Below, piece after piece: positions 34,254 to 62,175 of a stretch of DNA of 64,000 bases. Position numbers and translations under genes: made by a program. Source of the stretch: Eutreptiella sp. 'Long Island Sound 2002' (lineage: Eukaryota; Protista; Euglenida); contig OZ038378.1 in the NCBI GenBank assembly GCA_964036045.1, positions 182,280,001-182,344,000 of the forward strand. Direction: 5' to 3'. Numbering within the stretch: the first letter of the stretch is position 1; each line of letters begins with the position of its first letter. Below the pieces are notes generated by a model that was not told the DNA's origin, made no database searches, and was given only the letters and a program-made list of their open reading frames with translations.

Positions 34254-34426
34254 TCAGGCGGGGCCGGGGCTGCACGGCCGATTGTTGGAGGCGTCGATGC
34301 AGAACGACGTGAGCACTGCCGAGGCCTTCAGGTCCAGCGACGCTGTGGCGCACAGCTGGTGGTCATCGGGCACCACCGCCGTGTACTCGGGCAGCCACTC
34401 TACACTTTGCCTTGACCAATGCACCC
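34254..34426 (-). CDS. PRMT7: PRMT7 terminal exon
   Basis: VHWSRQSVEWLPE...LCATASLDLKASAVLTSF...PGPA-TGA. Confidence 0.8.
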
Positions 34427-37400
34427 CTGGACACGACGAAGACACCAGCCGGAGCCAAGCGGGCACGAACCGTGCGGCAGAAGCGGCGGCGGGTACACAC
34501 AAAACGAGGAGAGGCTGCGACGCACTGCGAAAGGTTGGCGGGAAAAAATGGCAAAATGGCCAATGTCACGGGCTCACTTGGGGCACAAAAGCCGTGACCT
34601 GAAGATGGAGGGTGGGAGGGGGGGCCAGGGGAACGGACGGAGGTATTGGTTGTGCCCGATATCACAATGCAAACAGCACGCGCACTGTGGCCCATGCACG
34701 TGAACACCCAATGACAATCCTTCGCATGCAGCATCGCATCTGCGCGCAGTATGCGACCCCTACTGCAAAGCGATCGAGCCTGCAGAGATTGGAAAGGCCG
34801 CGCACGTGAACGGACTAACACAAAAGCACGACCGTGATTGCAGACGCCGCGAACGCCTTACACAGCCGCACAGCGCACCGTTGCATCCGCCCCGCTCCGC
34901 CCCTCCACACACACACAAACGGTGTAAACCCCCAGTTCGCCCCAAGCCGTCGGATGCAACTTAGAGTTTACAAGTCTGCCACAATGCGCACAACATATAC
35001 AGAGTGGCGTACCCATATAATATGAACCCTGAGCATGCAGCGCCACATTTGGGGTTTCCTTACAGCCCCTGCCGCCTCTCCCCCTTCCCCCCCCTAACCC
35101 GTCTACGTACAAACATAGCCACAGGCATCTTACCCTCCTGGCACAAAACACAGGACCTCCAACGACGTAACCAATCGTAGAGCTGTGCCACGTGAGCTGT
35201 GCCATCTGCTACAGTCGGTCAGCCGCCCCCCTATACCCACACATACTGCGCAGACAGGCCGGGCTCTTCCGTGACGGGACCGTAGAGACTGGCCTCTGAT
35301 GCCCGGCAGCGGCACGAGTGATCACCCGGTAGCACGGGGGCGGCCGCCAGCCAATGTGTGACCCCGAGGGGTGTTCGACAGTTTGGGGGGCTGTAGGGGG
35401 GGGGGGGGGACCCCCACCCCCCTCCGAAGGGGGGGGGGGGGGACCCCTCCCCCCCCCCTTGGTTGACCCAAACCCAGCACCTTTTCCGGCAGGCCCCGTC
35501 CAAGCGCGCAAACACACAAAGCTAACAAGATGCACTGTGAATGGTCATTGTTTTGCTGCACTGCAGCACTTTCAGAGTAGTATTGAATGTTGCCTTGAGT
35601 TCGCCCAAAGGCCTTTCCTTCCCCTTGTCACAAACCACAGACATATATGTAGAGAAGCGAAGGGAGCCACAGACATATAGAGAGAGAGAGAGAGAGAGAG
35701 AAGCGAAGGGAGGGGAGGGGCCTCAAGCTTCGGGCTGACGTTTGCAGTTAACATGTCTGGGTCAAACAAACAAGTGGAACACCCCACATTTCACACGGGG
35801 GGCAAAATCAGAAGTGGCCCACAAAGTGGGCAAATTGGCTACCTCCGCTTCAAAGCGGGGGACTAAATCAGAAGTGGCCCACAAAGTGGGCAAGGTGGCT
35901 ACATAACCTTTTTTGTGCTTTTCAGCCATTTTTGAATTCTCCACAAAATTCTGAGTATTTTGAGGATAGACACATAGGGTGGAACAAGAAAAATTCCCCC
36001 TGCCGTATGCCTAAAACAAAATCTCCGGCGCCTCCGGCGCCGACAAAGCACCTTGTTCCGTGCGACAATTTTGGGGTCCGTAGAGGGGGGGGGGGGTCCC
36101 CCCCCCCCCCCCCTTTGGGGTCGGGTCCTGACCAGGGGCGGCCCCCGTGCCCGGTAGCCCAAGTCACATGGCGCCGTCCAGGTTCCACTACCACAGGGAC
36201 GGAGGACAACCGCGAGCGCTATGCCCAGCGTTTGCCCTGGTGGCCGGGGCTCCGGGATGCCATCAAAGCGGAGGGCCCAACGAGGTCTTGCTCGCCCTCC
36301 CACCGCCGGTCACCGGTGCAGTGCGGTGACGCCGCCTCTTGTGGGAGATGGCCGCTGCGCTCCGCCACGGCGCATGTGCCAGTGGCACTGCTTGCGTCAC
36401 GCTGGCATCGCTGCGGGATTGCGGCGGCGGCGGGCGGGTGCCAACTTCTCACCAAATCCCAAGAAGGGGGTAAAAAAGCTTTGCGGGCAGAACGGGACAC
36501 CGTTACTGGCCACGTCATCCCCAACCCCTTCCCCTCCTCGCAGGCCAGCCAAGGGCCATTTTGGCACCACTCGGGGAAATCGCGGGGAACACCCCTGACC
36601 CATAATTTCAAATGTACGTTCCCCCCCATTTTTATTAAGAAAGCCGAATGCACCCAAATTTGTTCCCGACGAAGCATTTCCGCGCGTCGTGCCGCGCGTG
36701 TTACCAAAATTAGTTCCGGCTCTCCCTCAGCAGCTACTGGGACGCATGTCAGCAGGAGGGCACAGCTAATCGCCATTTGCAGGGGTCGCCTGGGCCCTGA
36801 GGGCGTGCATGCCATTTCACGCCGGGGTGCTCCTCGAGTTGCAGACCGGGAGTGTCTGTGTGTGTGCGCACCGCACCTCTTTAGGCCTGCGTGCAGCACT
36901 GGAGGTGTGGTGTCAGATGCGCAGGTCATGACCCCTGGGCCCAGATTGGCACGCACCACTGATGCCACAGGGTAGTGGTGAGTGAACAGCAAATGCGAGC
37001 CAGCAGGCAATTGCTTGCGGTCATTTCAGCGCCTGGCCAGCCCCGGCTGGCCCACCCACCCACCCATCCGGACGTACCTGGGAGGGGGGGGGGTCCTGCT
37101 CAGGTCTGCCCAAAGGCGGGGCTGGGCTTGAGCTTGCCGCGTGCCCCCCTTGAGTTCAAAATGCTCCTGTTTGGCATTTGGCCCATGCCCCACATGAGCA
37201 CACAGGTGCTGCCATGGTGCAGAAGAATGAGGGATAAAGCAGCACAAAAAGTGTCCATAAGGCGCGGAGACAGACCAAGGACGGCGAACAGTTGGCATCG
37301 TCTGCAAAAGCTACAGCCAACACCTGAGCTTCTGTGGTGACCATTTCCAGTTTTCCACCACCCAACACCCCCAAAAAGCGGGAAATGGCCCAAAAAAATG

Positions 37401-40400
37401 GTTCGAATCAGCTATGACCTGCTGGCCAGCCAGCCTTGGGGCCAGGGTGCCTCCCTGCCTCTATCCCTCACTCCATCCCTCCCTCAACCCCAAGGTTCGA
37501 GGCAAATCTGGCACTGATTGGTCCACACACCAGCATTTGGCAAAGGGTACCCACGGAGTGTGTACTCGGAAGGCCACGGGCCCGGACGAAGGTCGACATC
37601 CACCCACATCAGAATGGCATGTGCGGTACCTGCAAACATCACACGAGACTACATCGGTCCAGGTGCCACGGAAGAGCCCATGCCGATTCGCCTTTTGCAT
37701 TCCCCCGACCAAACGCTCCCTGCCAGGCCTCCGGTGTTCCCCCGAAGACCAGCCTCAACCAGCACAAGGCACCTCGAACCGTGCTTCCCACCCACCCATC
37801 CGCTGTGGGGGCGGGGCCCCCCTGAGCGGGACCCCCACGTCCTCCATGGTGCCCCCTGCCACGGGGAGCAGGCCTCATGTGCAACCGAGCCCAAGGCTGT
37901 GGTTTGGAGGGGACTTGGGGATCCTGTGACACAGCGTCCAGGGTAGGGGTGCATTGGGAGGGGGGCAGGCACCCCCCTGTGTGACATTCCGTCGGGTTGC
38001 TGTTTCTTTACGGGGCCCTGGACAGTCACCCGTTCTTCCCTTCGCATGCTGCGTCGGGTTGCTGCGTTCTGTCGGCCGCTGCCGCCTACGTTCCTGCTGC
38101 TGTCGTTTTCGCGTTGGCGGAGTCCCGTAGTTGGCGTACCGGGGTTGTGCTGATTGCTGCGGGGGTTGTGCTGATTGCTGCGGGGGTTGTGCTGATTGCT
38201 GCGGGGGTTGTGCTGATTGCTGCGGGGGTCGTTTCTCGGCCGTTGCCGCCCACTCCCCTCCGCATTCTGGTCGTCCACCACCTGCCTCGCTGTGTTTCTG
38301 TGGGCATGTGGTCCATCGGGTTGCTGTTTCTTCACCCACCTGCCCCCTCCAGGGCGCCCAGCTTACGCCCAGCCACTGTCTCCCTGACGGCAAGTGCCAG
38401 CTTCAATGACATTTGTAACCCACAGTAACCGCCCCCAACCGCATTGGCAACATCCTCCGACTGCCTGTCTAACCCCTTCCCTTCTAATGCATCCCTGGCC
38501 CAGGGGCTCTGTATGGCCAACCGTCACACGTCAGACTTGTGCGGCAGACGTTCAGCAGTCGGCCCCCCCGGCAGTCGGTTGTGCGACACCGCAATCCGCA
38601 GCGCGTGTTCCCCGGTGCACTTCTGCGTCCGGATTGCCCAGGCGCACCCGCACGCACCGCCGCACCCACGTCGGTGGCGCACTTCCGGCGCTGCGGTCGA
38701 TTTGGCTGCTGCCCGTCCAGACCACCCCCCGCCCCCCGCCCCACCGCAACGGAGGGGCCATTCAGGTGGTGTGCCCTCTGTGCTGGGTGGCGTGATGGAC
38801 GCCCTGGGGGCCCTGTAGGGCAGGGCAGCAGCGCTTGACGCGCCCTGGGGCCCGTCCAGCAGCTGTCGGTATGACCTCCCGCCAAGCGTCCCCTTCCACA
38901 CGGATGACACCCACACGCGGACCTTGCGGTGTACAGATCGAGAGGGACCCCAACACTGGACACACGAAGCTACCCCCATGTGTGCGTGCGCGCACACACA
39001 CGTCCCGCACGCAAGACAACCTCCAGCACCATGACTAGAGAAACGGGCGCACAGGCGCGGGACACCCATGTGACCCGGCGTGCCCCCCGTGGCATGTGCA
39101 CACACACGAGGCATGGGGTCTGGGGGCTATCGCCCACAATGTGGGTGTCTTGCGGGTTGCATGGCCCAGAATGGCCAAACATGGCGTGAAAGGGGCCACA
39201 AGTAGTAAAAAACCTGGCGAGAGGGGGGATTGTCGGAGAGTGAGAGTTGCTAGTTTGTAAGGTGGTGAGGTGGAAAAAGGTTTGTATTTTTGGAGTCTAC
39301 GGGTTTGCCCCAGGTTACTAAAGAAAGAACATGGTGTAACTGAATGGTATGGGGCTGCATCTCTGCCCACAAAATGGGTGTTTGGCGGGTTGCATGGCCC
39401 AGGATGGCCAAACATGGCGATGATAGCCACTTCAATCGGAGAGGAAGATGTGACCCTTTTGACGCCAATTGGACGATTCTCCAACATATCGTCTTGTTCA
39501 GGTTGAACTCTTGCTTTTATGGTTTCCGGACATCAAAATGCACAAATTTATATCCCCCCTATTGTCGTCCCCGAAATGATATGTTGGAGATGTAGGCCTG
39601 GCCGGTTGTTGATTGTAGCCTGCTAGGGACACCATCGTTTTTCGTGAAAACCGGCCAACTTCCCTACTTCGCACAGCCCCGCCACTGTTTTGTTTGGCCA
39701 TGGGACCTTGATTTTCGAACTCCACATATCCAAAGTTGGTGGGTACCAACTTGTCAACAAAATCCATCCCTACCTCGAGAAAATCCAAAAACGGCCAACA
39801 AACCCCGACTTTGCGTCAAAAAAGCCTTAATCACCCACCCACCCCACACCCCTCAAACGCCCATATATATAGCATATTGAGAGTGTAACTCGTCTGATTC
39901 CTAAATGGAGTCTGGGGCAGATTCACTTGCACAGGAGGAGCTACTATCCCAATCATCTTGTGGAGGCATTGGATGAGGGTTTTGATCTTGTAGGATTAGA
40001 AGCCACTTGTCGTCAAATAGTAAGAAGCGGCTGTACCCTGGGCTGCATGGTTCAAATCACAACAGGCCGGCCGGCCTTGTGACGGGGCACTTTGATTCTC
40101 TCTCCGTCGTGTCAGGCAGGGGCAGGCGCCCAGACCGCGCGAGATGATAGTTTTGAAGAGGCCTTGACCCACCCCAGCCCCGCCACACGACAATCAGAGT
40201 ACACCTGCTTTGATGATGGGCACACGGCTGTCGCTCTTCCGATAAATGCCATCTGCAAGACGACACCGAGGCGTGTTCCGGGGTGAAGAGAGGGGGTGGT
40301 TGCATAGCCACTTTGCTTTCTTCGCCCTCTTTGGGGCCTCAAGCTGAAATGGGGTTGCATGACCACTTTGAATCGTTCCTCCTTTCTGGGGCCGCCGAGA

Positions 40401-43400
40401 TGGCAGTCGTTAATTCGTCAATTTGATCCCTTCGACCTCTGTGGAGTCCCCAGGGTGGTAGGGGTTACGTAGGGACTTTGATTTCTTCCCCGTCTTTGGG
40501 GTACATGCCTCTATTCCCATGCAAGCCCCATGGATACCGGCATATCCAAAGAGCCTGCCTGATCGTACAGTGTGGAGACCGCAGCATCTACGCCCCGCTG
40601 CCCCTCTTGAGCAAGTCCGTTGACCTTCGAAGGGTCGACTGTCAGAAGCGACAGCGTGCTCTCCCCCGCCCTTCAGCCTTTCGCATCGAGTTGGACGTTG
40701 GGCCACCACTGCTCTGTGTTTCGTGGGCGTCTTAAACCCACTGCCTGTGCCCCTGCTGCGGTCCCACTGTACTTCATACCGCGGTCTACCACCTTGGCAC
40801 CGACAGAGAATCGATGCATTGGCCCACAGAGAACCTTCCAATACAAATCGCTCTGACGCTCATTTGCCACAAGGAACCCGCACAGCAAAAACCCAGCAAG
40901 GCGGATGCGGACAGGCACACAAAGAGCACAGCAGTCCCATTTTCCGGTGTGGTGGGCTCTGCAGTGCCGACGACATGGGGCGTGACCTGCAGCGGCGGCC
41001 TTGATGTGGTCAATGGGCTCACTGAAATTGAAATGCAACAGTGGCACCGGATTGGTGAGCAGAGTGTGTTCGTATTCCCAGACGCAGAGCGGCAGATGGG
41101 CGTCCTCACCTGAGGGACATGCGGCACATGTGGGGGGTGCCAAGGGGAATGCTTCCTGCGGGCTGCAGGCGCAGCAGGGTAAGGGTAATTAGCTTTAGGG
41201 TAATTGGACCCGCATTAATTTTCCTCAATTTTGGGTGAAGGAAGTAGGTCAAAAAAGGAACAATGGTGAGGCACTATACTCAAAACGGACAAAAGCGTTG
41301 CGATAACCACTGCCCACGGTTCACAAAGTGTACAATTTCCCCTGTTCCAGGATAATTACTTAAGTTGCGCGCTGCAGGCGCCGCAGAATTAGCGTTCACA
41401 AGGAGGGTTGAACGACGAAGGAGCAGAACGTTGCGTACGCCCCTGACTCATCGTTGTGGCCGCGGTCGTGGCAGTGGCAGTAGCAGTTGCCTGATGGGTG
41501 GGTTTAAGCAGTCACGCGTTGGTAACCGAAGGGCCACTGCACGCCACCCCATGCGCGTGGCACACGTTCCAGTGACCGCATGTGGAGCCGCGTGCCAAGC
41601 AGAGGACGATGCACAAAGCGACGCGCAAGTGAGCCAAAGATCGAGGGCAGAGATGTCGACAGCACATGTCAATGCTTTTACCTGCGCAACCTGATGGCCC
41701 TTGCTTCGTCTTGTGTGAACAGCAGCCGCGTTTTGGCCGCGTTTGGGTACCACTGCACTTTGCAGGAATGGGACGTGGGGTCGGGGCCTCGCCCACCACC
41801 AATTTATGTGTGCCCGTAAACCGGAAGGTCGAGCGCATGTTTGCGTCATGTGCGCTCTGTTGTGCTGTTTTCACGTAGAAAAGGTACCTGATTGCCTTCC
41901 ACATAAGTTCGCTTGTGACTGAGACTGAACCACGTGGACTCACTTGTTCGGCCTTTGTTAATGACAGCTACCTCTCTTCCCTCGCAGCAGACGCGCCCCA
42001 CCCGCCATTCTCCCCCTGTCGTAGCACACCAGTGGGGTTACAAGTGGGGGATGGGTCCGAGGGGGTGTGGGGCATCCAACCACCCAGAACACCCCTTTCC
42101 AAAACAACGATGCACCCTCTGGGGGTCTATTAGGAGTGTGGGGATGCATTGACCTGGACCCGAGGACAAGGGGAACCTGTAAACCCTGCGGCAGCGTGGC
42201 AAACGTTGTACTTGTGGTGCTCCACAAGCCCAAGTGGCGGGTGCAAGCAATGGCTGGGGGTTTCAGACCCACTCACCCATGGACTCAGGGCTAAATTATA
42301 AAGGGGGAAGCGGGAGGTCTGGGATTTTTCAGCCACCCACCCGAACTGAGAGCCCCCCCAAGACCCACAAAGCAAAAAAAAAAAAATCCGGATAAACGGA
42401 GCCTCTCCGCGGTATACCCCCGTGTCATCCCCTCTTTCCTCCGCCCAACGACAGAGCGCAGCTGAACAGGGCGTTCACGCCTGTTGGAGGTGCTTGTGCA
42501 CAAATTTGCCACGAGGAGTGTATCGTTCCGTGTTGGTGTTGAATGGGCTTGTGAGCGTTGCTTGGGGCACGGCCCCTGAGGTGAGAACCGAACGCAACAA
42601 CACGCCTCACCATACCACGGCCACGCAGGAAGCCCCTCAGACATGGACGCGTTCGGACATTAGATATTCGCACAAACCTGTGGCCAGCCTTTGGGCTTCT
42701 GCAAACGGGGTGTGATCAAAGCCATGGACGCTGGATATAAACCCGTGAGCCGAGGCCAAATGCTTAAATTGCACCAACGCGGCCATGAGGCGAGCCTACG
42801 TCGCACGGCATTGATGAGGGACAAGGGACAAAAATAGCAACCAAAACACGTGCGTTCAGCAAGTGCACGTGGCAAATGAGCCCCCCGGAACAGCATTCCA
42901 CCCCTTTTCCTATGGGCCGTTCCCCTGAATGACTCACATGGTCTCCCTTGTACTGTTCCTTCCCTTTCTACTATGATCTCTTTAGGGTCTTGGTGTTGTA
43001 TTTCAGACAACAATGCCCATAAGTCATGCGGGGCTGCAATTGGACAGCCCCCTCCCTTCCCCGGGGTGGCTCCCGTGACGGGAGCCCCAGACAGGCCCAC
43101 AGGGTGTGGGGGGTGGGGGATCCGGGATACCCCAACATATATCCCTCAAAATGATCGCCACGACGCGCTGATCATTTTGAGGTACATATCATGGGGAATA
43201 TTTTTCCAAACTTTTTCGTTCGGGCCGCTTTGCAGCCCGATTTCTGAGCCAGGACTGGTTCTCAGACTGCCACTTGAGAAGGGCTCTCTCATGGCTGCCC
43301 CTTTCCCTGCCCCCCCCCCCCCCCGGGGTAAGGGGGCTCGAACTGCCACCCCTGCAAACCCGAGTAATGTTTTTTGAAACGTTTTAATGCGAGTAATTTT

Positions 43401-44638: not shown

Positions 44639-44718
<80 letters not shown>

Positions 44719-45273: not shown

Positions 45274-45311
<38 letters not shown>

Positions 45312-51300: not shown

Positions 51301-54300
51301 TCCGAACGGTGCGTCAAAAGGATCGGCGGACGGACGGACGCATTCGGGGACGGCTACCGAAGGACGTGCCCCGGCGCTGGTTCGAGATGTACGCAAATGA
51401 GGGGGACAATGGGCCTTTGGTTGGAGAGCGGGAGAGAGCGGGAGAGCGACGAATTGTAAGTGGCGGAGGGACAGGGACGTCCCTCCGCCTTGAGGCACAG
51501 GCAGACACGGGGTGAGTCATGCAGGGAGGCAGGTGGTTGGGGGGGGGGGTGGAGACAGCAACGGAGCGAGGGGTGGCGGAAGGGGCGTGGGGGATCAGCG
51601 AACGCGGACTGGGGAGGCGCTACCGGGGGGTTTGCCGCAGAGGCGGAGGCAGTGTGCCGATTGGTACTGCCGGGTGTACGCAGTGGTGTGACTTGTCACG
51701 AGGAAATTCTTCGCGTGGCTTGTCCCAAGCCCCTGGGGACATGTATCTCCACCGGGTCAGAGTGGGACCGTTATCCCTCTGCTCACAAGTGCTGCTTCTG
51801 CCCCTGGGCGACCCTCCCACGCCGGCGCTGGTATTGCTTCACATGCCCATCACATTGGAGTCCGGAGGGCGCTCACCACCGCCGATGTGGGAAAGGTACC
51901 ACAGCGTTCCGGATCACCAAATGCTACCCATCGGTACCCATCGGGGGGGCGCAGCATTTCCAGGCGTTGTTGCCCTCGGGCTTTTGGGCGGCGGCGGCGG
52001 GGGGGGCGGGGCTTGGGTTCTGAAGTGTCGAATGATTTGAACGATTTTGAGGCCGTTGGATGTCTGCGCCTTCGACGCCGGGCTTCACCACAACAGATGT
52101 ACAGTGATGAAGCACCACTTCCGTAAATACCCCCAATTGACCAACGGAAAAGGCCAGCAGCCCAGGCTGCACTTGAAAAGGAATTACGCGGGGGAAATGA
52201 CTTCGTGTGAGGCGTTGCCGGTGCCTCGGATGGAGGGATGCCACGAGGCTGCGGCGGCACCTGCCCACTGTCCTACTGTCTCGGCGTCTGTGGACACCCT
52301 CGTGGGCCCAGTGCAGCCCCACCGGCACCCCTACTGACCACCCCATTCCCCCATTGCGTACCTGAGGTTCACTGCGTCGGGGATCATAGGCGAGTGCACC
52401 GGAATGATCTTCCTTCCTCCGGAACACGCGGCAAACTTCAAAGCCCCGGCCTGACGCCACAAGCAAACGAGAGATTGGGGCGTGCGCATGCGTCAGCCCG
52501 CGCTTCTGACGCATTGCAATGAGGAAGCTTTGGGCACATGTAGCGGGGCATGCCCGGGACAATCCCGCGCTGCACGGCCCAGCGCGTGCCGGTGCAGGCC
52601 GCAACGGGCGTACTCCCACGGCACATGCGACGACCCCCAGATCGGTCACTCACTACGGACTGCAGCCCAGTGCTCATGCCGCCGAGTGGATGAGGCAGTG
52701 CACCGTGCTACATAACAACACGTCAAGACGATGAATGCCCGTCTCTTCATTGCCCCATTGAACGTGCATATCAAGAAGAACCGGACTGTTACAAAGGGGA
52801 AACAAGCGGAGGAGTTGTGGTACGTTCAGGCCCCGGCACTTCATGACATCGAGTAGCAATGCACCGCCATGCTGCAACGGTCTCTCTGCCCACCGCCGCA
52901 CAGGGCACTCACCAATCCTCTACACAGGGGTCGGGGGGTGGGTAAGACCTAAGTAAGGTGCGCGAAGCGGCAGACTAACCTTGTTTAACACAGGGGTCGG
53001 CGGGGGGTGGGGGGTCGGGACAATGCCCAAATGTTGCTGCTCTCCTGGCAGCTGGCGGCGTCAATCGACTGCTCGCCACTCACGAGGATCCACAAAGCCG
53101 CTGTGTTGGCCCACCGTTGCTATCTTTCTATCGGTGGCGGGTCGTGGCACCGACACATGAAAGATCCACACGGCAATACCGTTCGGTGCGGAGTGTAAAC
53201 ACGGCAGAATGGCCCGGGGGGTGGGGGCGGGGCAGGGGCGGCAGTAGGCCTGCCTCTTGCCTTTACCTCTGCGCTTGGCCTTGTCCGTCCCACCCGCGAG
53301 ACACGTCGCGCGCGCCCCCCTGGCCCTGCCGCCCGGGAGCACGGGACGCGTACCGCGGCACTGCCCGCGAGGTTGTGCATCGCGCGGACGGACGGGCTTT
53401 GGATCAATCGCCCGAAGATCGTGGCGGAATAGGGGACAGTGGGAGCGGACGGCATCAGCAGGCGCTCCCGGGCGTCCCTGAGGGACGGGAGCACCCCTTC
53501 TCCGATCAGGTGACTGTCCAAGATCTCGGACACCACCATATCGCACTGAGAGAGAGCGACGGGTGAAGCGCAGAGTGGACATTCAGGTGGAGGGTGGTCA
53601 GGGGGGCGGCGGGTCCTCATCGTGCATGACCGTATCTGTGTGTGACGGGACGGTGGATCCTGCGAGGGGCACCAGGACATCTGACCGACAGAGGCAGACG
53701 GTGTTGTCTCGTGGAACGTGATGGGCTCTACTGCACGCAGTTGACGACCAGCGAGTCTCCCTTGACCACCAACCGCCAGTGCCACTGCAGCACAGGACCA
53801 GTGCGCACCGCAACTTTGCACGCACTTCGCTCTCAAGACTTCTACGGCGTGGAATACCGCCGAAATCAGGTTCGTGCGGTCCCGAAAAATATGGGCATTG
53901 AGGTGGTACCCAACCGTTTTGAAACTGAAAGTGTGTCACGTGTTTGTGGTCCAGTTTCGGTCGTTTGCCACGTATTTGTGACCCGATTTCAGTCACACCG
54001 TCGCATCCGGGGCATTCTGGGGTTTCACCAGGACACAAACCGGCCCGACGGGGGCAGTCCTGGAGCCAAAAAAGGTGTTCTAAACCTCCTGCGGAGGGGG
54101 CGTACCTGGCGCAGTGCACTCGCGGTGGAGGAATCAATGCGTGCCGGGGCTGAGGCAGCCAGCGGTTTCAAGGGTTCCTAGTTCCAAGCCATCAACTCCG
54201 TGGGACTGTGTGTTGGTATTTGGGATTTGGTATCAGGGAGGGGGTTGGGTCGGGTTAAGGCCTCTCCCGGTCGCTTACCACCCACGGCCTGCGCTGCGGT

Positions 54301-57300
54301 CCCTGCGCGACTCGACTGGGAGAGACGAACCTGCTGGCCCGGGAACAAGGCCTGCCGGGCTGGTGACAGCCCCCTGACTCCGGGATGGCGCTTGCGGGCG
54401 GGAGACACCGCCGTGCCTGTGTGTGCGTGCGGGCTACCGTGTGGGATGGGGGGGGGCACGCCACGCCTGGCCCGGCCTCACTGTCCGGTGTCCTGGCGGT
54501 GTGTCGGTGGCGGGGGTCGTTCTTACCGCGGGCGCACCGTGGCGTTGGCGCCGGGAAGGGGTCTGCGGGGGTGTTGGTGTGTGGGGGCACTCAGTCAAAC
54601 CTCTGCCTGGACCCCCTGACATGCAATGACGAGGGAGGGGGAGGGGGGCTGGTCAGGAAGAGGGTGAATCGCAGCAAAGGGCACATGTGGCGACCACCCT
54701 ACCACTGAGTGGTCGGCACTCCGGACTGTCACACACGCGAGCGCGGCCTGCAGGCCGAGGCCTGTGCGTTCAGGATTTTATAGGATCGACCAACGAGTCG
54801 GCAAACCGCATGTGCTCATGATTACAAGATGACTTGGGGCGGGGAGGAGGAGGAGGAGGAGGAGAGAATGCAGCTGTTCCGGGCAGCCCAATAGCCCATG
54901 AGCGCGCCCGGGCAGTGGTTTCACGCACACATGTCATGTGTGCGGTACCTCCTCATGCCCCTCCTCACTTGGCTACCTCCGGGCCCGAAAATAGGGGGAG
55001 CCGGGCTCCACTCCCAGCCCCCGGAGGGAGGGGGCGATCGCGGTTCGTGGGGCAGATGTGGATGACATTGTCACGTGGACGAGGGCATTCACAGACCACA
55101 TACTTTGTCAGGGATGTCAACCCCCACCACAACGGATGTGCTCCGCCTGGGCAGTACCGTAACTCGCGACTTGAGGCCGGATAACTCAAGTATCTGTTGG
55201 CTCAGCACGACAAGCGACTGAAAGCCTTCGCAGGCGTAGACGTGTGCAGCGCCAGCCCTGTGCGACATGACCAGAACAGTTATCACCTTCCGGCACGCGG
55301 CGAGTGAGGGAGCGCGTGCGGAATTCGTCTGCACACGTTGAAGAAGACGGGGAAATGCGAATGTTCGGCACGTGCTTTGCATGTGTTCGGTAGGTCCTTG
55401 GCCAGGCATGGTACGTTGGTGTTGGAGCACCAATGCGCACCCAGAGAGTCCGTTCGGAGAGGCGGACGAGGTGCTGGAAGTGGCTGGTGCACTGCCAATA
55501 TGTGACGAAGAAGGCAGGATACCCAAAGACGAGCGGAGAGGAATAACAACCGCTACATGACCCATGCTGCCTCCCCTGCTCTTGAAATTGCACACACAGA
55601 CAAACAGACGCACCCACATCCACACCCACACCCACACCCACACCCACACCCACACCCACACCCACACACAGAGATATATATGGGCGTTTGACCGGGGGAG
55701 GGGGGGTGGATTCCGATGCAAGATCGGAGTTTTTTCAGTTCTCGCCGTTTTTCTCAAAAATATTGTTCCGGAGGGGGGGGGGGGGGGGGGCATGTTATAA
55801 CTTTTTGAAAGAAAGAAGAAAAGGTCGTTTCGGAAAGGTAGGGTCATGGGGGGGTAGGTGACCATATTTTTTCGCCCCGGGCCGCCGAACTTGGGCGTTT
55901 CGGCATCCGCTTGTGAACCTTGGTCTACACTGCATGCAAGGTTTTCAAGGCGCTCGGCCCGGTCCTCCAACATATCGTTTCAATGACGAGAAAAGGGGGT
56001 ATATAAATTTGTGCATTTTGATGCGCCGAATTCAAAAATGCAAGAGTTTCGGCTCAACAAGACAATATGCTGGAGAATTGCCCTGTTTACTGCCCTGATG
56101 TCCACCACCATGCTGATCACAGCCAGTTTAGTCGGAGAGGAAAATGTGACCGTTTTGACGCTACTTGGCCGATTCTCCAACATATTGTCTTGTTGAGGCT
56201 GAACTCTTGCGTTTTTCAATTCAGCACATCAAAATGCACAAATACATCTTCCCCCCTTTTTCGGCACCAAAGGGATATGTTGGATATGTAGGCCCGGCCG
56301 GTTGTTGCCTGTGGCTTGCTATTGAGGGACACCAGCGTTTTTCCTGAAAACCAGCCAACTTCCCTACTTCGCCCAGCCCAGCCACTGTCTCGTTTGGACA
56401 TGGGACCTTGATTTTTGGATTCTCCATGTCCAAAAATAGGGGGGGTACCTTATCCCATATGACATATCCCCAGTATCATGACAAAAATCCAAAAAAAAAA
56501 ACGGCTGAAAAAACTCCGACTTTGCGTCAAAATGGCCATTATCACCCCCGCCCCCCGGCCAAACGCCCATATATATCCACCCGCCCGCACGCACGCACGC
56601 ATGCACGCGCACACACACACACATGCACGCACACGCACCGTGCAGCCATCATTGCAAGCAGTCCACTGCCCGTTCCAATGTCAAGAACGGTGGGCGGGCG
56701 CCCGTGAGTGTCGGTAAATTGTTGCACAGCCAATCGGATCGCTTCGTCATAAAGGTCGTTGCGCACGGAGTCCCGCAGCATCGGAGGAAACCAGAGCCTG
56801 TGCGAAACACGCAGACAGCCTCCTTTGTCACTTTCCCATGCCCCCGAACGTGGCGTACATACAGTTGGCGGTATGTTGAAGAATGGGGAGGGAAATGGGG
56901 TCAAGAAGCAGACGCTCGATTCTAGCGATGCTTTTGAGCCCCATCCCTGTGCCCTTGCCAGCCATGTTACTTCCTGAAGGACTCTGGGGGGTTGCCGTTA
57001 AAACCCAATAATTGCGAAAATTGAAAACGGGCCCAACAACGGAAGAGGGGTGCGGCACAAACAAAACGAATACCTCCATTTCTACATTGTATGGCAGTGA
57101 GGCAAAGAGCGGTAAGCAGCACAGCAAGACGTGCAGATCTGGGGGGGGGGGCTTAGTGCCTGGGAACCAGAGTCGTGTTTTGTGCGGATGTGTCGCAGAC
57201 TGGGTGAGGGAGAAAGTAGATGATTGCGTCGTGGATGGGAAGAGTACAAGGTCTGAACGCTGTCTGCCTTGGGCAGCCTTTGGTCTGTACCATGCAAGCT

Positions 57301-58018
57301 TTGATGATTTGCGAAAACCATTGATTCTCAGCACGTGTCAAAACACAGAAATCCAAAAAATGCAACGATTTCTGTTCCGTCCACAAATCGCGAAAAAGGA
57401 ACAATCATTTGGATCTGCACGTCTTGTGCAGGTCAGCTCCCGAGGCTGACACTCCCAGGGCTGGCACTGCCACCAGAGGCTCAGCCGCACTGGTGCTTAA
57501 TGCGCACGTTCTGCACTGTCTGATAATGGGCATCCTGGGGCTTCCTGTGGCTCATGCCGCACGGCCCCTGTTCCGCCGATTGCGCGAGGACGGGGCCCTT
57601 CCCTTCTCTCTCCTTCCCTCACACCGAACAGAATACGCCTGCGCACAGACACAGCGCTGGTCCCACTGTGCGCCCCCCCGCGATCCCGGACCCCACTGGC
57701 AACGCCACGGCACGGCGCACTGCAAGACGCCGCGGCAATGCGAAGAGGAGCCGCGAGTCTCGACCTGAGCATACTGATGGTCTTTGGGTCGCGCTGCCCC
57801 TCGCTCTCCATCGGGACCCACTCAAGACCTCCATTTTGAGGGTCGAGCCGCGCCCGCAGCTGCACTTCTTTCGTGGTGCCATCCTCTTGGTCAGCCTCGG
57901 CCACGAGGATCTCGTCTGCGTTGGCCTCCGTAAACGGATCGGTCGCCTGCGCAATGGGGGGGCGGTCCACGACGGCTGGTGGCGTACCGCGTAGTGGAAC
58001 GGGTATCTCGCATGTAAC
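34254..58018 (-). CDS. PRMT7: Protein arginine N-methyltransferase 7-like (two tandem PRMT modules), 17 exons, 740 aa; probably the C-terminal part of an RMT2-PRMT7 fusion
   Basis: Exons 58018-57765, 56797-56639, 55257-55104, 53545-53354, 52871-52720, 51290-51120, 48212-48158, 47362-47294, 46292-46167, 46045-45955, 45802-45642, 44284-44183, 42795-42678, 41109-40987, 40252-40205, 37629-37555, 34426-34254. All GT-AG and phase-consistent (2223 nt). Motifs LDPQNGGLEW, MLRDSVRN, VLDIGTGSGLLAMMAARAGA, VYACE, VSEILDSHLIGEGVLP, WQDHW, CACG..ND, DGSF, FWYLRTA, GFD, VWEY, GTAHAILMWVD. Confidence 0.87.
37555..37629 (-). CDS. PRMT7: PRMT7 exon
   Basis: ttgcag|GT TAHAILMWVDVDLRPGPWPSEYTL C|gtgggt. Confidence 0.83.
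37973..38302 (+). repeat. Repeat family R2, copy 2, with an internal 21-bp tandem expansion (GGGGTTGTGCTGATTGCTGCG x4)
   Basis: Direct alignment with copies 1 and 3. Confidence 0.9.
39410..39870 (+). repeat. Dispersed repeat family R3, copy 1
   Basis: Aligns with 56100-56580; both end in AAACGCCCATATATAT. Confidence 0.88.
40205..40252 (-). CDS. PRMT7: PRMT7 micro-exon (probable)
   Basis: ttgcag|AT GIYRKSDSRVPIIKA G|gtgtac; phase 1 to phase 1. Confidence 0.6.
40987..41109 (-). CDS. PRMT7: PRMT7 exon
   Basis: EDAHLPLCVWEYEHTLLTNPVPLLHFNFSEPIDHIKAAAA. Confidence 0.85.
41145..41365 (+). repeat. Dispersed repeat family R1, copy 2 (PRMT7 intron)
   Basis: See copy 1. Confidence 0.85.
42678..42795 (-). 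CDS. PRMT7: PRMT7 exon
   Basis: ARLMAALVQFKHLASAHGFISSVHGFDHTPFAEAQRLAT G|gtttgt. Confidence 0.85.
44183..44284 (-). CDS. PRMT7: PRMT7 exon
   Basis: cccag|SMCNRPVWNYLNFWYLRTAMQPKLHSEAVVVPNQ|gttctt. Confidence 0.85.
44647..44715. repeat. (CA)n microsatellite
   Basis: About 34 units. Confidence 0.97.
45642..45802 (-). CDS. PRMT7: PRMT7 exon
   Basis: RVVGLN...ARLNGLTN...VRAVVGDCFYQ. Confidence 0.82.
45955..46045 (-). CDS. PRMT7: PRMT7 exon
   Basis: AATGTLTEGTVLDICDGSFAGLLVAKALPD. Confidence 0.85.
46167..46292 (-). CDS. PRMT7: PRMT7 exon (start of second module)
   Basis: GTSPPPPPAPSSCACGWQLLPTHRILALNDASRGQLLRQALE|gtgtgc. Confidence 0.82.
47294..47362 (-). CDS. PRMT7: PRMT7 exon
   Basis: VTNGQEVKLSAAHNDFDIWLRLS|gtgtgc. 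Confidence 0.85.
48158..48212 (-). CDS. PRMT7: PRMT7 exon (THW-loop equivalent)
   Basis: ctcag|G HWQDHWHQAIWPFANVSQ|gtgcgt. Confidence 0.88.
50303..50636 (+). repeat. Repeat family R2, copy 3
   Basis: Near-identical to 33016-33348. Confidence 0.92.
51120..51290 (-). CDS. PRMT7: PRMT7 exon
   Basis: DPFPVFDVDF...HDGTVDGVLMHWTLQL...YTTDP. Confidence 0.9.
52720..52871 (-). CDS. PRMT7: PRMT7 exon (probable)
   Basis: HGGALLLDVMKC...PVLLDMHVQW...; weak donor gttgtt chosen to satisfy phase 2. Confidence 0.55.
53354..53545 (-). CDS. PRMT7: PRMT7 exon (double-E loop)
   Basis: CDMVVSEILDSHLIGEGVLPSL...PYSATIFGRLIQS. Confidence 0.93.
55104..55257 (-). CDS. PRMT7: PRMT7 exon (post-I)
   Basis: AGAAHVYACE...RSTSVVVGVDIPDK|gtatgt. 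Confidence 0.92.
55611..55670. repeat. (CACACC)n microsatellite
   Basis: Read directly from the sequence. Confidence 0.95.
55950..56580 (+). repeat. Dispersed repeat family R3, copy 2, with an internal partial duplication
   Basis: TCGGAGAGGAA.ATGTGACC...GATTCTCCAACATAT...CCAACTTCCCTACTTCGC...CCGACTTTGCGTCAAAA shared with copy 1. Confidence 0.85.
56639..56797 (-). CDS. PRMT7: PRMT7 exon (motif I, SAM binding)
   Basis: LWFPPMLRDSVRNDLY...VLDIGTGSGLLAMMAA. Confidence 0.93.
57765..58018 (-). CDS. PRMT7: PRMT7 region exon 1 (acidic linker + QLRARLDPQNGGLEW)
   Basis: ccgtag|GTT in phase 0; donor AG|gtcgag; no in-frame ATG before the conserved N-terminal motif. Confidence 0.75.
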
Positions 58019-58793
58019 CTACGGCCCTGGGCTCGAGCCTCTGGAGCCTTGCAGAGCCCCAAGAATTGCGTACTCATCGAAAGTGAACCTGCGAATGGCT
58101 GTTGCAGCGGGGGGAGAGGGGGGGGGGGTCTTCCTCAAGGGCTGGGGGGGTGCCGTGCAGTACAACCGGTGTTCAGGGCCATGCCTTTTGTGTGATCCGC
58201 TTTTGTTCGTGAGCTCATTTGTGAGGGGCATTGCGGTGGGGGAGGGGGGGGGGGCGTGCCGTTTTGTGGGTGGGCGTGGGCCACAAAGCAACTACGCGTG
58301 TTGGGTGTAGACTGCCCGCTTGCAAGTGCGTGCCGCCGTGTGTACAGGAGGGGGCCTGGGAGGGCGGCGGGGGGGGGGTCCCACAAAGGCTGTGGGTGGG
58401 TGGGTGTAGTACAGCCGGTGTCCAGTGCCATGTCTTCTGTGTGGTCTGCTTTGGTTGAGCGAGGGCGTTTGTGCGGGGCGGGGGGGGCGGTGCGGAGGAG
58501 GGGGGGCGGTCGCAGGTTTGTGTACCAGGGTCGAATGTCTGTCCCACTGTCCACGGCTGCAGCATTCCGCCCCTGCGGAGTCCATTCCCCCCGCCATCGC
58601 TGACACGCTACACGTTCCCGAGCCGCGCCCTGTCGGGGGGGGGGGGCGGGGCGGAGGGTACTGCCGCTTGAAATGGGCGGGGGGGGGGGGTCAGCCATCG
58701 CACTCCAGCGCGTGCGCTCAGGGACAGTGTCGTGTTGCAGACTAAAACGCCAGCCCTTTGTACGTCTGCCACAGCCCCTGCGCACGGGCACAC

Positions 58794-58847
58794 CTCTTCC
58801 TCCGGAGCAGAAGCAGGACTTTGTTTGGCCGCTGCGGATGTGGGCCC
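58794..58847 (-). CDS. Linker micro-exon between RMT2 and PRMT7
   Basis: ccttcgtttgtgtgcag|GPTSAAAKQSPASAPEEE|gtgtgc; phase 0 to phase 0. Confidence 0.6.
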
Positions 58848-59807
58848 CTGCACACAAACGAAGGAAGCGAGTGCCCTCCGCAGTGCTCGCGGAGGAGGGC
58901 CCTACGCAGTGCCCGAGACACGGCACGGGCCGGCACGGGGCCGCAGGAGACGGCCGCGGCCGGTGTCGTAACGGTGGGTGTGGGTGCGGGCACGACGAGC
59001 CATCAAAGCAACGGCAAACGGACGTGCCACTGGGCGGTGGAGCATGGGACCGTTCTCATTGGACGGCCTCCTCGTTCGGGGCTTTGGCTTGGCCTCTTGT
59101 GCGTGTTTGGCGGGGCGGGGGGGGGGGCTTAGAGGCTGAACAGGTGTCCGGGTGGGGGGTGGGGGCGGGGGCCCGGCCAGCACCCCCTCCCCCGGGGGTG
59201 AGGGGTGAGGGGGGGGGGGGGGCGTGCCTCTTGTGTGTGGCGAGGGCGGGAGAAAATAGGGAGGAGTGAGTCTGGAGGCGCATGGCAACCGCGCCGAGGA
59301 GGTGTGGGGGTAGGGGCCAAGCAATCAAGGCAACACAAACGACTCTTTCGTGTGTACAGAGCGTACGTGGCCGAACGATGCATAGGGCCTGCGGACGCGG
59401 CCCTGATTGACGGCGCCGTGCGCCCGGGGACTCTGGACGTGCTTCACTCACCCAACGCCTCTCATACGGCGTGTGTGGGGGGGGGGGGGGGGGGGATAGC
59501 AGGTGGTGGAGTAGGATCGATGTCCTGCACCATGTCTTTTGTAGGACCTGATTTTGTTGGTGGAGTTCCATCTTGTGGGGCAGTTTGTAGGGAGGAGCGG
59601 ACGGATTGGCGGGGGGGGTGTGTAGGGAAGGGAGGATTCCACACATCCTGGTTGGGGGCCCGTGTGTTTGCAACGGGGGACCCCAGACCAACAACAACCG
59701 GGGCACTGTCGAGGGGTCCCAGCGATACGACCCACTGGCCCCTCCCCGTGCCTCAGGAGGCTGCCTTCGACGCCTGCCCTGACCCCCGGCACGAGGTCGC
59801 ATCGTAC

Positions 59808-59945
59808 CTCATCGTTGTCAGACTCCTCCTCAGGGTAGTAAATGGCCGTGGGGAGGAAATACTCTTTGCGGTCGTGCCAGTACTTGCGTCGGACCCCGTC
59901 CCAAGTCTTGTCGTCGACGTCAATAGGCACCGTTTGGAAATCAAC
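59808..59945 (-). CDS. RMT2: RMT2 exon carrying the end of the RMT2 domain, with no stop codon
   Basis: ctcag|VDFQTVPIDVDDKTWDGVRRKYWHDRKEYFLPTAIYYPEEESDNDE|gtacga; the W..V...Y....Y..P motif is the normal Rmt2 C-terminus. Confidence 0.83.
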
Positions 59946-60033
59946 CTGAGTGTGTCACGCCACATCATACACTACATCCCAGGCTATTGCACGGGACAGT
60001 GCACTGTACCACACCACACCACACTACAAAACG

Positions 60034-60380: not shown

Positions 60381-62034
60381 CACCATCATTACCACGACAG
60401 TACATCTTCCCCATGGGGGGCACTCAGGCTCAGACGCTGACACCAACACCCACCCTAACCTTTTGGGCCCTGTGGGGTGGGGGTGTGGGTGGGTGGAAGG
60501 GTCCTGGGGGGGGGGGGCGCCGGGCTGCAGTCCCGGGTACCCCAACAGACATACCTCAAAATGCCTCGTCGCACTGATCATTTTTGAAAACACATATTTG
60601 GGGGTTTTGAAAAAACAATTTCAGCCCTCTGGGGGGGTCTGGTCCCAGCAGCCAAGTGTTGGGGGCTGGATGGGGGAGGGCAGGGGTCTGAACAAATATT
60701 CATGTTTTGCATACGTATTTGGATTCCCCAAGAAATTCTGAGCATTTTGAGTGTGCACACATGGGGTAACAACGCAGGCTTACCCCTCACCATATGCTGA
60801 AAATTTCCGGCGCCTTCGGCGCCAAATTTGAGCCAGATGTGGTCCCGACCTCCTCAACGTTTTGGACCTCTGGGGAAATTGGTAGTGGTAGTGGTAGTGA
60901 GCCCGGGCGTGTACGGGCACCGCATAACAGTTGCGACCAGCCCCCGGCCCCGACCTTCCGGGACGGCAGCTGTGACCCGATTCCCTAGCAGACATGTACA
61001 CGGGCCGGGGCATGCCTTGAGGACTTCCGGGCGTTTGCCACATGCGTGGTACAACATGTGCTCCCTGATGCCGGGTGAGAAAGGATGGTAGGGGGCTGGA
61101 CAAAGAACTGGGATTTCCATGTGTTTGTCTCAGGTGGGGTACAACTTGTGCTCCCAGGATTCGTACTGGGGGTTCCTGGATGCGTGGCTGGATGCATAAC
61201 CACTCAACCACTGGGACCCGTGCTAGAAAATAGCGCGGGGTAAACCGGGACTTCCTGGCGTTTGTCTCGGGGTGGGGTTTTACTTGTGATCCTGGGACCG
61301 GTCGAGGCCTTGTTGCTGGGGGGGGGGGGGGGCACCCATCCTTTCTCCCTGGCCTCCTCTTTTCCCCGGGGGGGGGGGGGGGCAAAAGCCTGCCGCCCCG
61401 TTTCCTGGCTCCCAACCGGGGGCCAGCCCACGGCCTGCACCCTCGCTTTGTGGTGGCTTAAATTTGGGCTGACAGAGCTCTGGGGAAATTGGGAGACGGG
61501 TGGGGGGTGGGGGTGTCAGGTCTGAGCCCGAGTGCCCCCCATGATCTTCCCCAAACAGCATCAGAAGGCCATGGTCGTGCCACAACATGCTCAAACAACG
61601 ACCTGCGCATGGCGGAGCTAGCCCTCTGGTTCAATGCACCATATCACCAACACAAAGCACGGCACACGGCTGCTTCGCATGCCCGGCGTCTTAAGAAGTA
61701 CACACGGTGGCAGCGCAGCCTCACAGCGCGGGTGCCCATCAAAAGTCGATTGAACGGTCCAATGGGACAGTTCTCTGAAGTCTGTGACACCTTTCCTCTG
61801 CCGTAGCGGCGACAGCCTCAAGACAGTATGCACCGCACAGTGCCTTGCTTTGACCTTGCAATGCATCCGCCATCTGCAGCAAATCTGACGCTGCAAATGG
61901 GGCGATGAATTGTTTCTTGGCCCTTTGGGCTCATAAACGCCGGCTGCTTGGGTGCCACTTAGACAATCGCATCCATGCAGAGATCCCTTGAGCCACGACC
62001 ACAACCAATGCCACCACATGAGGCCACATGACAC

Positions 62035-62175
62035 CTCGAACTCCAAGCGTTGAAGCTCCAATTGTACGCTTTGGCAGGCCACGGCATGGAAGAAGACATT
62101 CTTGGGAGCAAGGCCGTTGAAGAAGGAATACATTCCACCGGGTCGCAAAATGTCCGGCAGGATATCATGGAAGTC
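62035..62175 (-). CDS. RMT2: RMT2-type (type IV, GAMT-like) arginine methyltransferase, internal exon; 5' exons lie outside the window
   Basis: cctag|DFHDILPDILRPGGMYSFFNGLAPKNVFFHAVACQSVQLELQRLEFE|gtgtca; matches the recalled Rmt2 L.P.G..SFFNGL motif. Confidence 0.85.

What the first reader, a model, noticed from the sequence alone, without database searches (positions are those of the whole stretch)
34254..62175. Apparent RMT2-PRMT7 fusion: a type-IV and a type-III arginine methyltransferase in one polypeptide
Seen in sequence: the RMT2 C-terminal motif at 59945-59808 runs with no stop into a phase-0 GT donor. A phase-0/0 micro-exon follows (58847-58794), then a phase-0 acceptor at 58018 opens an acidic/Pro-rich stretch leading straight into the conserved PRMT7 N-terminal motif (LDPQNGGLEW). 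That exon has no in-frame ATG until 57811, after the motif, so PRMT7 cannot start there. Established: Rmt2 makes delta-N-methylarginine on ribosomal protein L12, and PRMT7 makes omega-monomethylarginine; they are normally separate genes. Inference: a three-module methyltransferase joined by a ~75-aa flexible linker. I know of no such architecture, but have not searched.
Basis: partly seen in the sequence, partly recalled or inferred. Interest (0 to 1): 0.82.

Follow-up and report, generated by a model that had tools for sequence, protein, structure and literature searches.

The report
Probable RMT2–PRMT7 fused methyltransferase gene
In this euglenid genome the gene for an RMT2/GAMT-type methyltransferase has no stop codon and the adjacent PRMT7 gene has no start codon, and RNA contigs show splicing out of the first and into the second, so the two arginine methyltransferases are most likely made as one long protein, though the middle splice junction has not been seen.

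Summary
On the minus strand the last RMT2-type exon (59945-59808) ends at a phase-0 GT donor without a stop. The first PRMT7 exon has no in-frame ATG ahead of its conserved N-terminal motif.

- **RNA evidence.** Metatranscriptome contigs join 62035|59945 and leave the genome exactly at 59808. They also join about 36 nt lying in the micro-exon's depth bin to PRMT7 exon 1.
- **Correction.** The acceptor used is at 57946, not 58018.
- **Frame.** All three joints are phase 0, so RMT2, the 18-codon micro-exon and PRMT7 form one open frame.
- **Alignment.** PRMT7 exon 1 aligns with the extreme N-terminus of stand-alone protist PRMT7s, so it begins where they have their Met.
- **Gene content.** PRMT7 is complete: two modules, intact motif I and double-E loop, stop at 34254. 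Both junction exons are single-copy in the genome.

Caveats:
- The 59808→58847 junction was not observed, and two unaligned letters hint at another acceptor.
- RMT2 identity rests on weak GAMT matches plus motifs recalled from memory.
- The Euglena longa homologue is not fused; the E. gracilis protein has no RMT2 part, though its 5' end may be truncated.
- None of 267 retrieved PRMT7-like proteins has an RMT2 part.

Verdict: a probable lineage-specific fusion (about 0.65), a new variant of known enzymes.

The parts
62035..62175 (-). RMT2/GAMT-type exon D (class I methyltransferase motif III region, ...RPGGMYSFFNGL...)
   Evidence: Open frame with AG|..|GT borders. An RNA contig joins it to exon E with 0 mismatches (X1 record 2).
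59808..59945 (-). Last RMT2-type exon (E). It ends in phase 0 with no stop codon, donor GT at 59807-59806.
   Evidence: The RNA contig stops matching the genome exactly at 59808 and has 2 further letters that do not fit the intron. Single copy in the genome.
58848..59807 (-). Presumed intron between RMT2 exon E and the micro-exon. This junction was not directly observed.
   Evidence: No specific RNA coverage except a high-copy repeat bin. 36 hypothetical ATG..GT first exons can be drawn here, none with RNA support.
58794..58847 (-). 54-nt micro-exon (18 codons, Ala/Ser/Pro/Glu-rich), phase 0/0, no ATG
   Evidence: RNA depth in bin 58792-58982 (0.49) equals 36 nt x depth 2.6 of the contig that continues into PRMT7 exon 1. 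DNA depth there is single-copy.
57947..58793 (-). Intron.
   Evidence: The RNA contig does not match 57946-57981 upstream of the AG at 57948-57947.
57765..57946 (-). PRMT7 exon 1: acidic N-terminal extension plus the L-x-A-x-L-D-P-x-x-G-G-L-x-W motif. No in-frame ATG before 57811.
   Evidence: RNA contig X1 record 1. Alignment A1 to the N-termini of stand-alone protist PRMT7s. tblastn with P0006, E 1.9e-5. Single copy.
56639..56797 (-). PRMT7 exon 2: SAM-binding motif I (VLDIGTGSGLL)
   Evidence: Best solved relative is mouse PRMT7 4c4a residues 33-85, E 4.6e-6. 334 library hits at E<=0.001.
55110..55271 (-). PRMT7 exon (post-I / motif II region), borders approximate
   Evidence: tblastn with E. 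longa P0007 and with P0006.
53369..53548 (-). PRMT7 exon with the double-E loop (SEILDSHLIGEG), borders approximate
   Evidence: Mouse PRMT7 4c4a residues 138-194, E 7e-6, and C. elegans PRMT7. 60% identity to the E. longa and E. gracilis proteins.
52373..52444 (-). PRMT7 exon, approximate
   Evidence: Colinear tblastn HSP with P0155.
51128..51298 (-). PRMT7 exon (beta-barrel part of module 1), approximate
48161..48214 (-). PRMT7 exon with the HWQDHWHQ (THW-type loop) segment, approximate
   Evidence: 67-71% identity to P0155 and P0007.
47306..47368 (-). PRMT7 exon, approximate
46173..46295 (-). PRMT7 inter-module exon, approximate
45959..46021 (-). PRMT7 module 2, degenerate motif I (VLDICDGS)
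   Evidence: 81% identity to P0007 and 62% to P0155.
45642..45800 (-). PRMT7 module 2 exon, approximate
44186..44260 (-). PRMT7 module 2 exon, approximate
42664..42792 (-). PRMT7 module 2 exon, approximate
41024..41113 (-). PRMT7 module 2 exon, approximate
37538..37630 (-). PRMT7 module 2 exon, approximate
34254..34415 (-). Last PRMT7 exon, stop codon at 34256-34254
   Evidence: The open segment ends at 34257. Colinear HSPs with the C-termini of P0007 and P0155.

Best explanation
A single long gene on the minus strand encodes one polypeptide. It starts beyond the window end and ends at 34254. The product has three parts: an N-terminal RMT2/GAMT-type class I methyltransferase module, a short acidic and Ala/Ser/Pro-rich connector, and a complete PRMT7.

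The connector is the RMT2 tail, an 18-aa micro-exon and the acidic N-terminal extension native to PRMT7. The PRMT7 has an active first module with motif I, a double-E loop and a THW-type loop, followed by a degenerate second module.

Mechanistically, the ancestral RMT2 stop was replaced by a GT donor at 59808. The ancestral PRMT7 start was replaced by an AG acceptor at 57946. Cis-splicing through the 54-nt micro-exon keeps the frame.

- **Shown:** donor use at 59808, the 62035|59945 junction, and an upstream exon joined to 57946.
- **Inferred:** that the 59808 donor pairs with the 58847 acceptor, that the product is translated as one chain, and that both enzymatic modules are active.
For: - **RNA junctions.** RNA contigs with 0 mismatches join 62035|59945 and leave the genome at 59808.
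- **RNA, micro-exon.** A second contig of similar depth (2.6 vs 3.2) carries 36 nt upstream of 57945 that do not match the adjacent genome. Those 36 nt account exactly for the RNA depth in the single-copy bin holding the micro-exon. 36 nt is longer than the 26-nt spliced leader as I recall it, so this is not a trans-splice site.
- **Frame.** Phases are 0/0/0 and no stop occurs.
- **No start.** There is no in-frame ATG in the micro-exon or in exon 1 before 57811. Yet exon 1 aligns residue for residue with the N-termini of stand-alone PRMT7s, and the Salpingoeca rosetta Met falls at the exon start.
- **No stop.** RMT2 exon E ends a few residues after the ...YFLP... segment, where, as I recall, GAMT ends, but without a stop (own knowledge for GAMT).
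- **Single copy.** Both junction exons are single-copy in the 2.28-Gb genome. No other intact RMT2 or PRMT7 copy of the host type was found.
- **Contiguity.** DNA contigs span 56640-59995 without mismatch, so the adjacency is not an assembly artefact.
- **Intact PRMT7.** The PRMT7 part is colinear with E. longa P0007 over residues 42-666.
Against: - The 59808→58847 junction itself is not covered by any contig.
- The two letters beyond 59808 did not align even to the intron's first G. That would be unexpected if the next exon began with G, as 58847 does. Alternative acceptors at 58831 or 58885 begin with C and would shift the frame, giving a stop in the motif-I exon.
- RNA support comes from one low-depth environmental metatranscriptome, as contigs only.
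- The E. longa homologue is an unfused ORF flagged complete, and the E. gracilis one shows no RMT2 part.
- None of 267 PRMT7-like proteins has an RMT2-like segment, so there is no phylogenetic corroboration.
- RMT2 identity is weakly supported: GAMT at E 0.26-0.8 for one exon and no Pfam or NCBIfam hit.
Confidence: 0.65

Rival explanations
1. Two separate neighbouring genes. RMT2 splices from 59808 to an unrecognised terminal exon carrying its stop. PRMT7 mRNA starts with a spliced leader and/or an unrecognised ATG-containing first exon that splices into the micro-exon or 57946.
For: - The middle junction is unobserved, and the 2 overhanging letters do not fit a G-initial exon.
- 36 hypothetical ATG..GT phase-0 exons can be drawn between 59807 and 58848, for example an exon ending ...ATG|GTGCAG at 59531.
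- Relatives in Euglena and a TARA contig are unfused.
Against: - RNA depth is zero in 59365-59746 and 58983-59173, while the flanking exons are covered.
- It requires two undetected exons.
- It does not explain why the stop and the start are missing exactly at the homologous protein ends while the frame stays open across all three pieces.
Confidence: 0.2
2. A read-through (conjoined) transcript that is not productively fused. The 59808 donor pairs with a C-initial acceptor (58831 or 58885). RMT2 then acquires an out-of-frame tail that stops inside the PRMT7 motif-I exon. PRMT7 would be made, if at all, from the internal ATG at 57811 or from another mRNA.
For: - The first letter after 59808 in the RNA contig is apparently not G.
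- Both alternative acceptors are preceded by AG and start with C.
- I followed the frame by hand exon by exon from the sequences; this was not a tool computation.
Against: - The 58847 acceptor has by far the better pyrimidine tract.
- This reading would leave the conserved PRMT7 N-terminal motif untranslated despite its conservation.
- It would give RMT2 a tail of roughly 125 aa of nonsense residues (my hand count).
Confidence: 0.1
3. PRMT7 here is a decaying gene that lost its start codon, and the apparent continuity with RMT2 is coincidental.
For: - There is no ATG before the conserved motif.
- The gene is only 40-60% identical to the Euglena homologues.
Against: - All detected exons are open and colinear over about 24 kb, with intact motif I, double-E loop and HWQDHW segment, and a proper stop.
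- Exon 1 is transcribed and spliced.
- It is the only host-type PRMT7 in the genome.
Confidence: 0.04

Closest known systems
PRMT7 (type III protein arginine methyltransferase; mouse 4c4a, C. elegans 3wst; protist homologues such as Salpingoeca rosetta XP_004993667, Euglena longa EP00668_P001029)
   Same: - Two tandem PRMT modules, with motif I, a double-E loop and an HW loop in the first and a degenerate motif I in the second.
- The same N-terminal L-x-A-x-L-D-P-x-x-G-x-L-x-W motif preceded by an acidic stretch.
- Best solved relative for two separate exons.
   Different: It has no start codon of its own. Its first exon begins at a used 3' splice site at the position where other PRMT7s have their Met, and is joined in RNA to upstream sequence.
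RMT2 (yeast type IV, delta-N-methylarginine on ribosomal protein L12) and guanidinoacetate N-methyltransferase (GAMT; 3orh, 1khh, 1xcj)
   Same: - Five colinear exons carry class I methyltransferase motifs in the order typical of this subfamily: ...VMMEWE..., GFGMG, EAHP, GRWQD..FYDTY, PGG.YSFFNGL, W.GV.RKYW.
- For exon C, four of the five PDB hits are GAMT, at the homologous position.
- The type IV assignment of Rmt2 is from PMC4860837. The motif resemblance to yeast Rmt2 is from my own memory.
   Different: - It has no stop codon after the domain.
- Statistical support from tools is weak (E 0.26-0.8, no Pfam or NCBIfam model hit).
- The N-terminal part of the gene lies outside the window and was not modelled.
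- RMT2-like and GAMT-like function cannot be told apart here.
Stand-alone euglenid PRMT7 homologues: Euglena longa GGOE01001232.1.p1 (P0007) and E. gracilis EG_transcript_5763 (P0155)
   Same: Colinear with the window's PRMT7 exons from motif I to the C-terminus at 40-80% identity per exon.
   Different: - Neither protein has an RMT2 part, and the E. longa ORF is flagged complete; the E. gracilis protein starts at an internal-looking Met, so its 5' end may be truncated.
- They lack the LDP..GG..W motif.
- The window's genome has no closer copy of them, so it is a different species and the fusion is at most lineage-specific.

Membership tests
PRMT7 | SAM-binding motif I (VLD-h-G-x-G-x-G) in the first module, preceded by the ML-x-D-x-x-RN segment | tested here: met
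   Exon 56797-56639 matches mouse PRMT7 4c4a residues 33-85 at E 4.6e-6, ahead of PRMT9, PRMT4 and PRMT1.
PRMT7 | Double-E loop with both catalytic Glu nine residues apart | tested here: met
   SEILDSHLIGEG aligns to TELFDTELIGEG of 4c4a residues 138-194, E 7e-6.
PRMT7 | Two tandem PRMT modules in one chain, the second with a degenerate SAM motif | tested here: met
   Colinear HSPs to P0007 residues 42-666. The module 2 motif reads VLDICDGS.
PRMT7 | N-terminal L-D/N-P-x-x-G-x-L/V-x-W motif at the very start of the protein | tested here: met
   Alignment A1 has invariant A, G and W. The motif is present, but it sits after a splice acceptor rather than after a Met.
PRMT7 | Forms only omega-monomethylarginine (type III activity) | not testable with these tools
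   This needs an enzyme assay.
RMT2 / GAMT (RMT2-domain methyltransferases) | Sequence similarity to the RMT2/GAMT catalytic core | tested here: inconclusive
   - For exon C, four of five PDB hits are GAMT, but at E 0.26-0.8.
- Exons A, B, D and E gave no GAMT hit.
- No Pfam or NCBIfam hit.
- The motif resemblance to yeast Rmt2 is recalled, not computed.
RMT2 / GAMT (RMT2-domain methyltransferases) | Class I methyltransferase motif order (I, post-I acidic residue, II, III) in one open, colinear exon series | tested here: met
   Exons A-E carry GFGMG, IIEAHP, FDAIFYDTY and RPGGMYSF in order, with consistent splice phases.
RMT2 / GAMT (RMT2-domain methyltransferases) | Delta-N-methylation of Arg in ribosomal protein L12 (type IV) | not testable with these tools
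   Established for yeast Rmt2 only (PMC4860837).
Gene fusion (single ORF, single transcript) | Continuous reading frame across all junctions | tested here: met
   59808 is phase 0, the micro-exon is 54 nt and stop-free, and 57946 is phase 0.
Gene fusion (single ORF, single transcript) | RNA molecules spanning from one gene into the other | tested here: inconclusive
   Donor use at 59808 and the micro-exon|57946 junction are supported. About 17 nt between the two contigs, including the 59808|58847 junction, are uncovered.

The most novel reading that the evidence does not exclude
A natural three-module enzyme in which an RMT2-type (delta-N) and a PRMT7-type (omega-N mono) arginine methyltransferase are tethered in one chain. 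This would act as a Rosetta-stone link, implying that the two act on the same substrates or complex in this euglenid (for example ribosomal or RNA-binding proteins). My searches found no such architecture.
Probability: 0.4. Interest if true: 0.7.

Novelty: new variant of a known kind. Interest (0 to 1): 0.55.

Why it matters
RMT2 and PRMT7 are the two least understood arginine methyltransferase types. Rmt2 has essentially one known substrate, and the physiological targets of PRMT7 are debated.

A natural fusion would argue that the two enzymes work on a common target or in a common complex. It would also offer a ready-made construct for testing whether delta- and omega-methylation are coordinated.

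It would be a clean example of gene fusion by loss of a stop and a start codon with recruitment of a micro-exon, in a lineage where trans-splicing normally separates neighbouring genes. If the junction is not confirmed, the locus is simply two ordinary neighbouring genes with incompletely known ends.

Tried and rejected
- **Word-index protein searches.** Searches with PRMT7 exon 1, alone and as a region of its open segment, found only the window's own ORF.
- **Metagenome scan.** A scan with the RMT2 C-terminal exon gave one chance match (L006, an AT-rich contig, 12 residues).
- **Atlas searches.** Two RMT2 exons gave no usable hit.
- **Family models.** Pfam and NCBIfam scans of the exons gave nothing for RMT2 and only sub-threshold generic methyltransferase hits for PRMT7.
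- **Library hits with motif I far from the N-terminus** (P0028, P0084, P0078 and others). They looked like possible fusions but are PRMT-PRMT tandem proteins with no RMT2 part.
- **Contig C2026.** A 985-aa open frame matching PRMT7 was considered as a retrocopy of the fusion. It is instead an intron-less, stramenopile-like stand-alone PRMT7 (called ORF 956 aa), probably foreign DNA in the assembly.
- **Second copy of RMT2 exon D on C14.** It was examined as a possible processed pseudogene that would record the mRNA structure. It is a decayed DNA duplicate carrying intron sequence and no exon E.
- **P0006.** The contig of this closest N-terminal homologue could not be read.
- **TARA contig of P0008.** It shows an in-frame stop upstream of its Met, so it is unfused.
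- **Literature.** Searches found no report of an RMT2-PRMT7 fusion.
- **Scan of 57700-60000.** The promoter/terminator scan was uninformative, and no spliced-leader match was found anywhere in the window.
Full report
**Setting**

The window is G000:C1:182280001-182344000 of a 2.28-Gb assembly. The organism is a euglenid.

It is not the Euglena gracilis of EukProt. EG_transcript_5763 (P0155) and E. longa P0007 match the genome best at this very locus, but only at 40-60% identity per exon.

**Checking the observation**

- On the minus strand, 59945-59808 translates openly (VDFQ...SDNDE) and is followed by GT. Read-through would add 114 further codons before a stop.
- 58847-58794 is an 18-codon open stretch flanked by a strong pyrimidine tract plus CAG on one side and GT on the other.
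- The frame carrying LDPQNGGLEW is closed by TAG at 58021-58019, and its first ATG is at 57811.

So the sequence statements hold.

**RNA evidence**

Only one RNA data set held the locus, an estuary metatranscriptome kept as contigs (X1). Three DNA-like runs of the organism cover exons and introns alike.

- **X1 record 2** (279 nt, depth 3.2, no mismatch). It lies on 62173-62033 and 59943-59808. Allowing for the two letters that fit either side, this is the GT-AG junction 62035|59945.
- **X1 record 1** (202 nt, depth 2.6, no mismatch, sense orientation). It lies on 57945-57780 with 36 letters on its 5' side. The orientation of record coordinates follows from comparing X2 record 15 with X4 record 31.
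- **Consequence for the acceptor.** The acceptor used is the AG at 57948-57947, and the exon starts at 57946, phase 0. It does not start at 58018.
- **Where the 36 letters lie.** The depth table accounts for every X1 bin from these two contigs. Bin 58792-58982, which is single-copy in the DNA runs, has depth 0.49, exactly 36 nt x 2.6 / 191. The 36 letters therefore lie there, as expected for the 3' end of the micro-exon, with one G fitting either side.
- **Not a trans-splice site.** 36 nt also exceeds the 26-nt spliced leader (length as I recall it), so 57946 is not a trans-splice site in this molecule.

What is missing is the roughly 17 nt between the two contigs, including the 59808|58847 junction. 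A caveat follows from this. If the next exon began with G, as 58847 does, the first overhanging letter should have aligned to the intron's G. It did not. Acceptors at 58831 and 58885 start with C. By my own hand reading of the sequences, they would shift the frame and lead to a stop inside the motif-I exon.

**The PRMT7 part**

- Exon 56797-56639 has mouse PRMT7 as its best solved relative (4c4a, E 4.6e-6).
- The exon around 53548-53369 also has mouse PRMT7 as its best solved relative (E 7e-6), with both glutamates of the double-E loop in place.
- The library search with the motif-I exon returned 334 proteins at E<=0.001.
- E. longa P0007 (700 aa, source flag 'ORF type: complete') and E. gracilis P0155 align colinearly from 56799 to 34332. 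The alignment includes an HWQDHWHQ segment, a degenerate second motif I (VLDICDGS) and the C-terminus, which ends at the stop 34256-34254.
- The PRMT7 part is therefore a complete two-module PRMT7.

**The PRMT7 N-terminus**

Exon 1 (57946-57765) aligns over its whole length with the first 40-90 residues of stand-alone PRMT7s from diverse protists. These share an acidic A-x-x-E-E-L-V stretch followed by L-x-A-x-L-D-P-x-x-G-G-L-x-W. The Met of the Salpingoeca rosetta protein falls at the start of the exon.

So the exon border coincides with the ancestral protein start, but the ATG is absent and a used splice acceptor sits there instead.

**The RMT2 part**

Five colinear exons with consistent phases carry class I methyltransferase motifs in the order I recall for RMT2 and GAMT.

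| Exon | Location |
|---|---|
| A | L003 4549-4409 |
| B | L003 1294-1190 |
| C | L003 496-375 |
| D | window 62175-62035 |
| E | window 59945-59808 |

Tool support is thin. For exon C, four of the five PDB hits are guanidinoacetate N-methyltransferase at the homologous position, but at E 0.26-0.8. The other exons and the Pfam and NCBIfam models gave nothing. I therefore file it as an RMT2/GAMT-type module with moderate confidence. The gene's 5' part was not modelled.

**Copy number and contiguity**

- Both junction exons occur once in the genome.
- The only other piece is a decayed copy of exon D with three stops on C14.
- A DNA contig covers 56640-59995 without mismatch, so the adjacency is real.

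**Is the architecture known?**

None of the 267 PRMT7-like proteins retrieved contains a segment resembling any RMT2 exon at blastp E<0.1. The E. longa homologue is unfused, the E. gracilis protein shows no RMT2 part, and a TARA Oceans relative has an in-frame stop before its Met. Literature searches found nothing. The fusion, if real, is lineage-specific and not described in what I could search.

**Conclusion**

The most economical reading is a gene fusion. RMT2 lost its stop, PRMT7 lost its start, and cis-splicing through a 54-nt micro-exon keeps one frame. The product would be an RMT2-type module, a connector and a two-module PRMT7.

| Reading | Probability |
|---|---|
| Gene fusion, one polypeptide | about 0.65 |
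| Two genes with undetected terminal and initial exons | 0.2 |
| Out-of-frame conjoined transcript | 0.1 |
| Decaying PRMT7 | 0.04 |

**Limits of this work**

I did not build, search or fold the joined spliced protein. All searches were exon by exon, by reference.

Noticed in passing
L003 1882-1917 (minus) = about 1.9 kb beyond the window end, inside the RMT2 intron between exons A and B: There is an exact spliced-leader 3' part (TTCTGAGTGTCTATTTTTTTTCG) preceded by a run of about 17 G, on the same strand as the gene. It looks like a retroposed capped trans-spliced RNA. Another reader already noted it as s1-195348.
   Followed up: partly
G000:C2026:28825-31695 (L015 3825-6695, plus strand): An intron-less 956-aa stand-alone PRMT7 with a stramenopile-like N-terminus (MYSGFSK...) sits on a 40-kb contig. 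Its gene style is unlike the host's, so it is probably foreign DNA in the assembly.
   Followed up: partly
G000:C14:12057755-12057895 (L017 4955-5095, minus): This is a decayed duplicate of RMT2 exon D (82% DNA identity, three stops). Homology starts exactly at the exon's 5' border and continues into pieces of the downstream intron. No exon E was detected.
   Followed up: partly
window 60030-60090 and 60250-60400, and 61275-61465: Pentanucleotide (GCTGT)n arrays and other very high-copy repeats lie inside the RMT2 intron. DNA-run word depth there reaches 10^4-10^5 against a baseline of about 6-30.
   Followed up: no
window 58100-58600 (minus): Two diverged copies of a repeat of roughly 100 nt (...AAGACATGGCACTGGACACCGGCTGTACT...) lie in the intron between the micro-exon and PRMT7 exon 1. 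They are multi-copy in the DNA runs, and RNA contigs end with loose ends there.
   Followed up: no
window 56500-56639 (minus): A (GT/GC)-rich simple repeat lies directly after the donor of the PRMT7 motif-I exon. The reads tool masked it.
   Followed up: no
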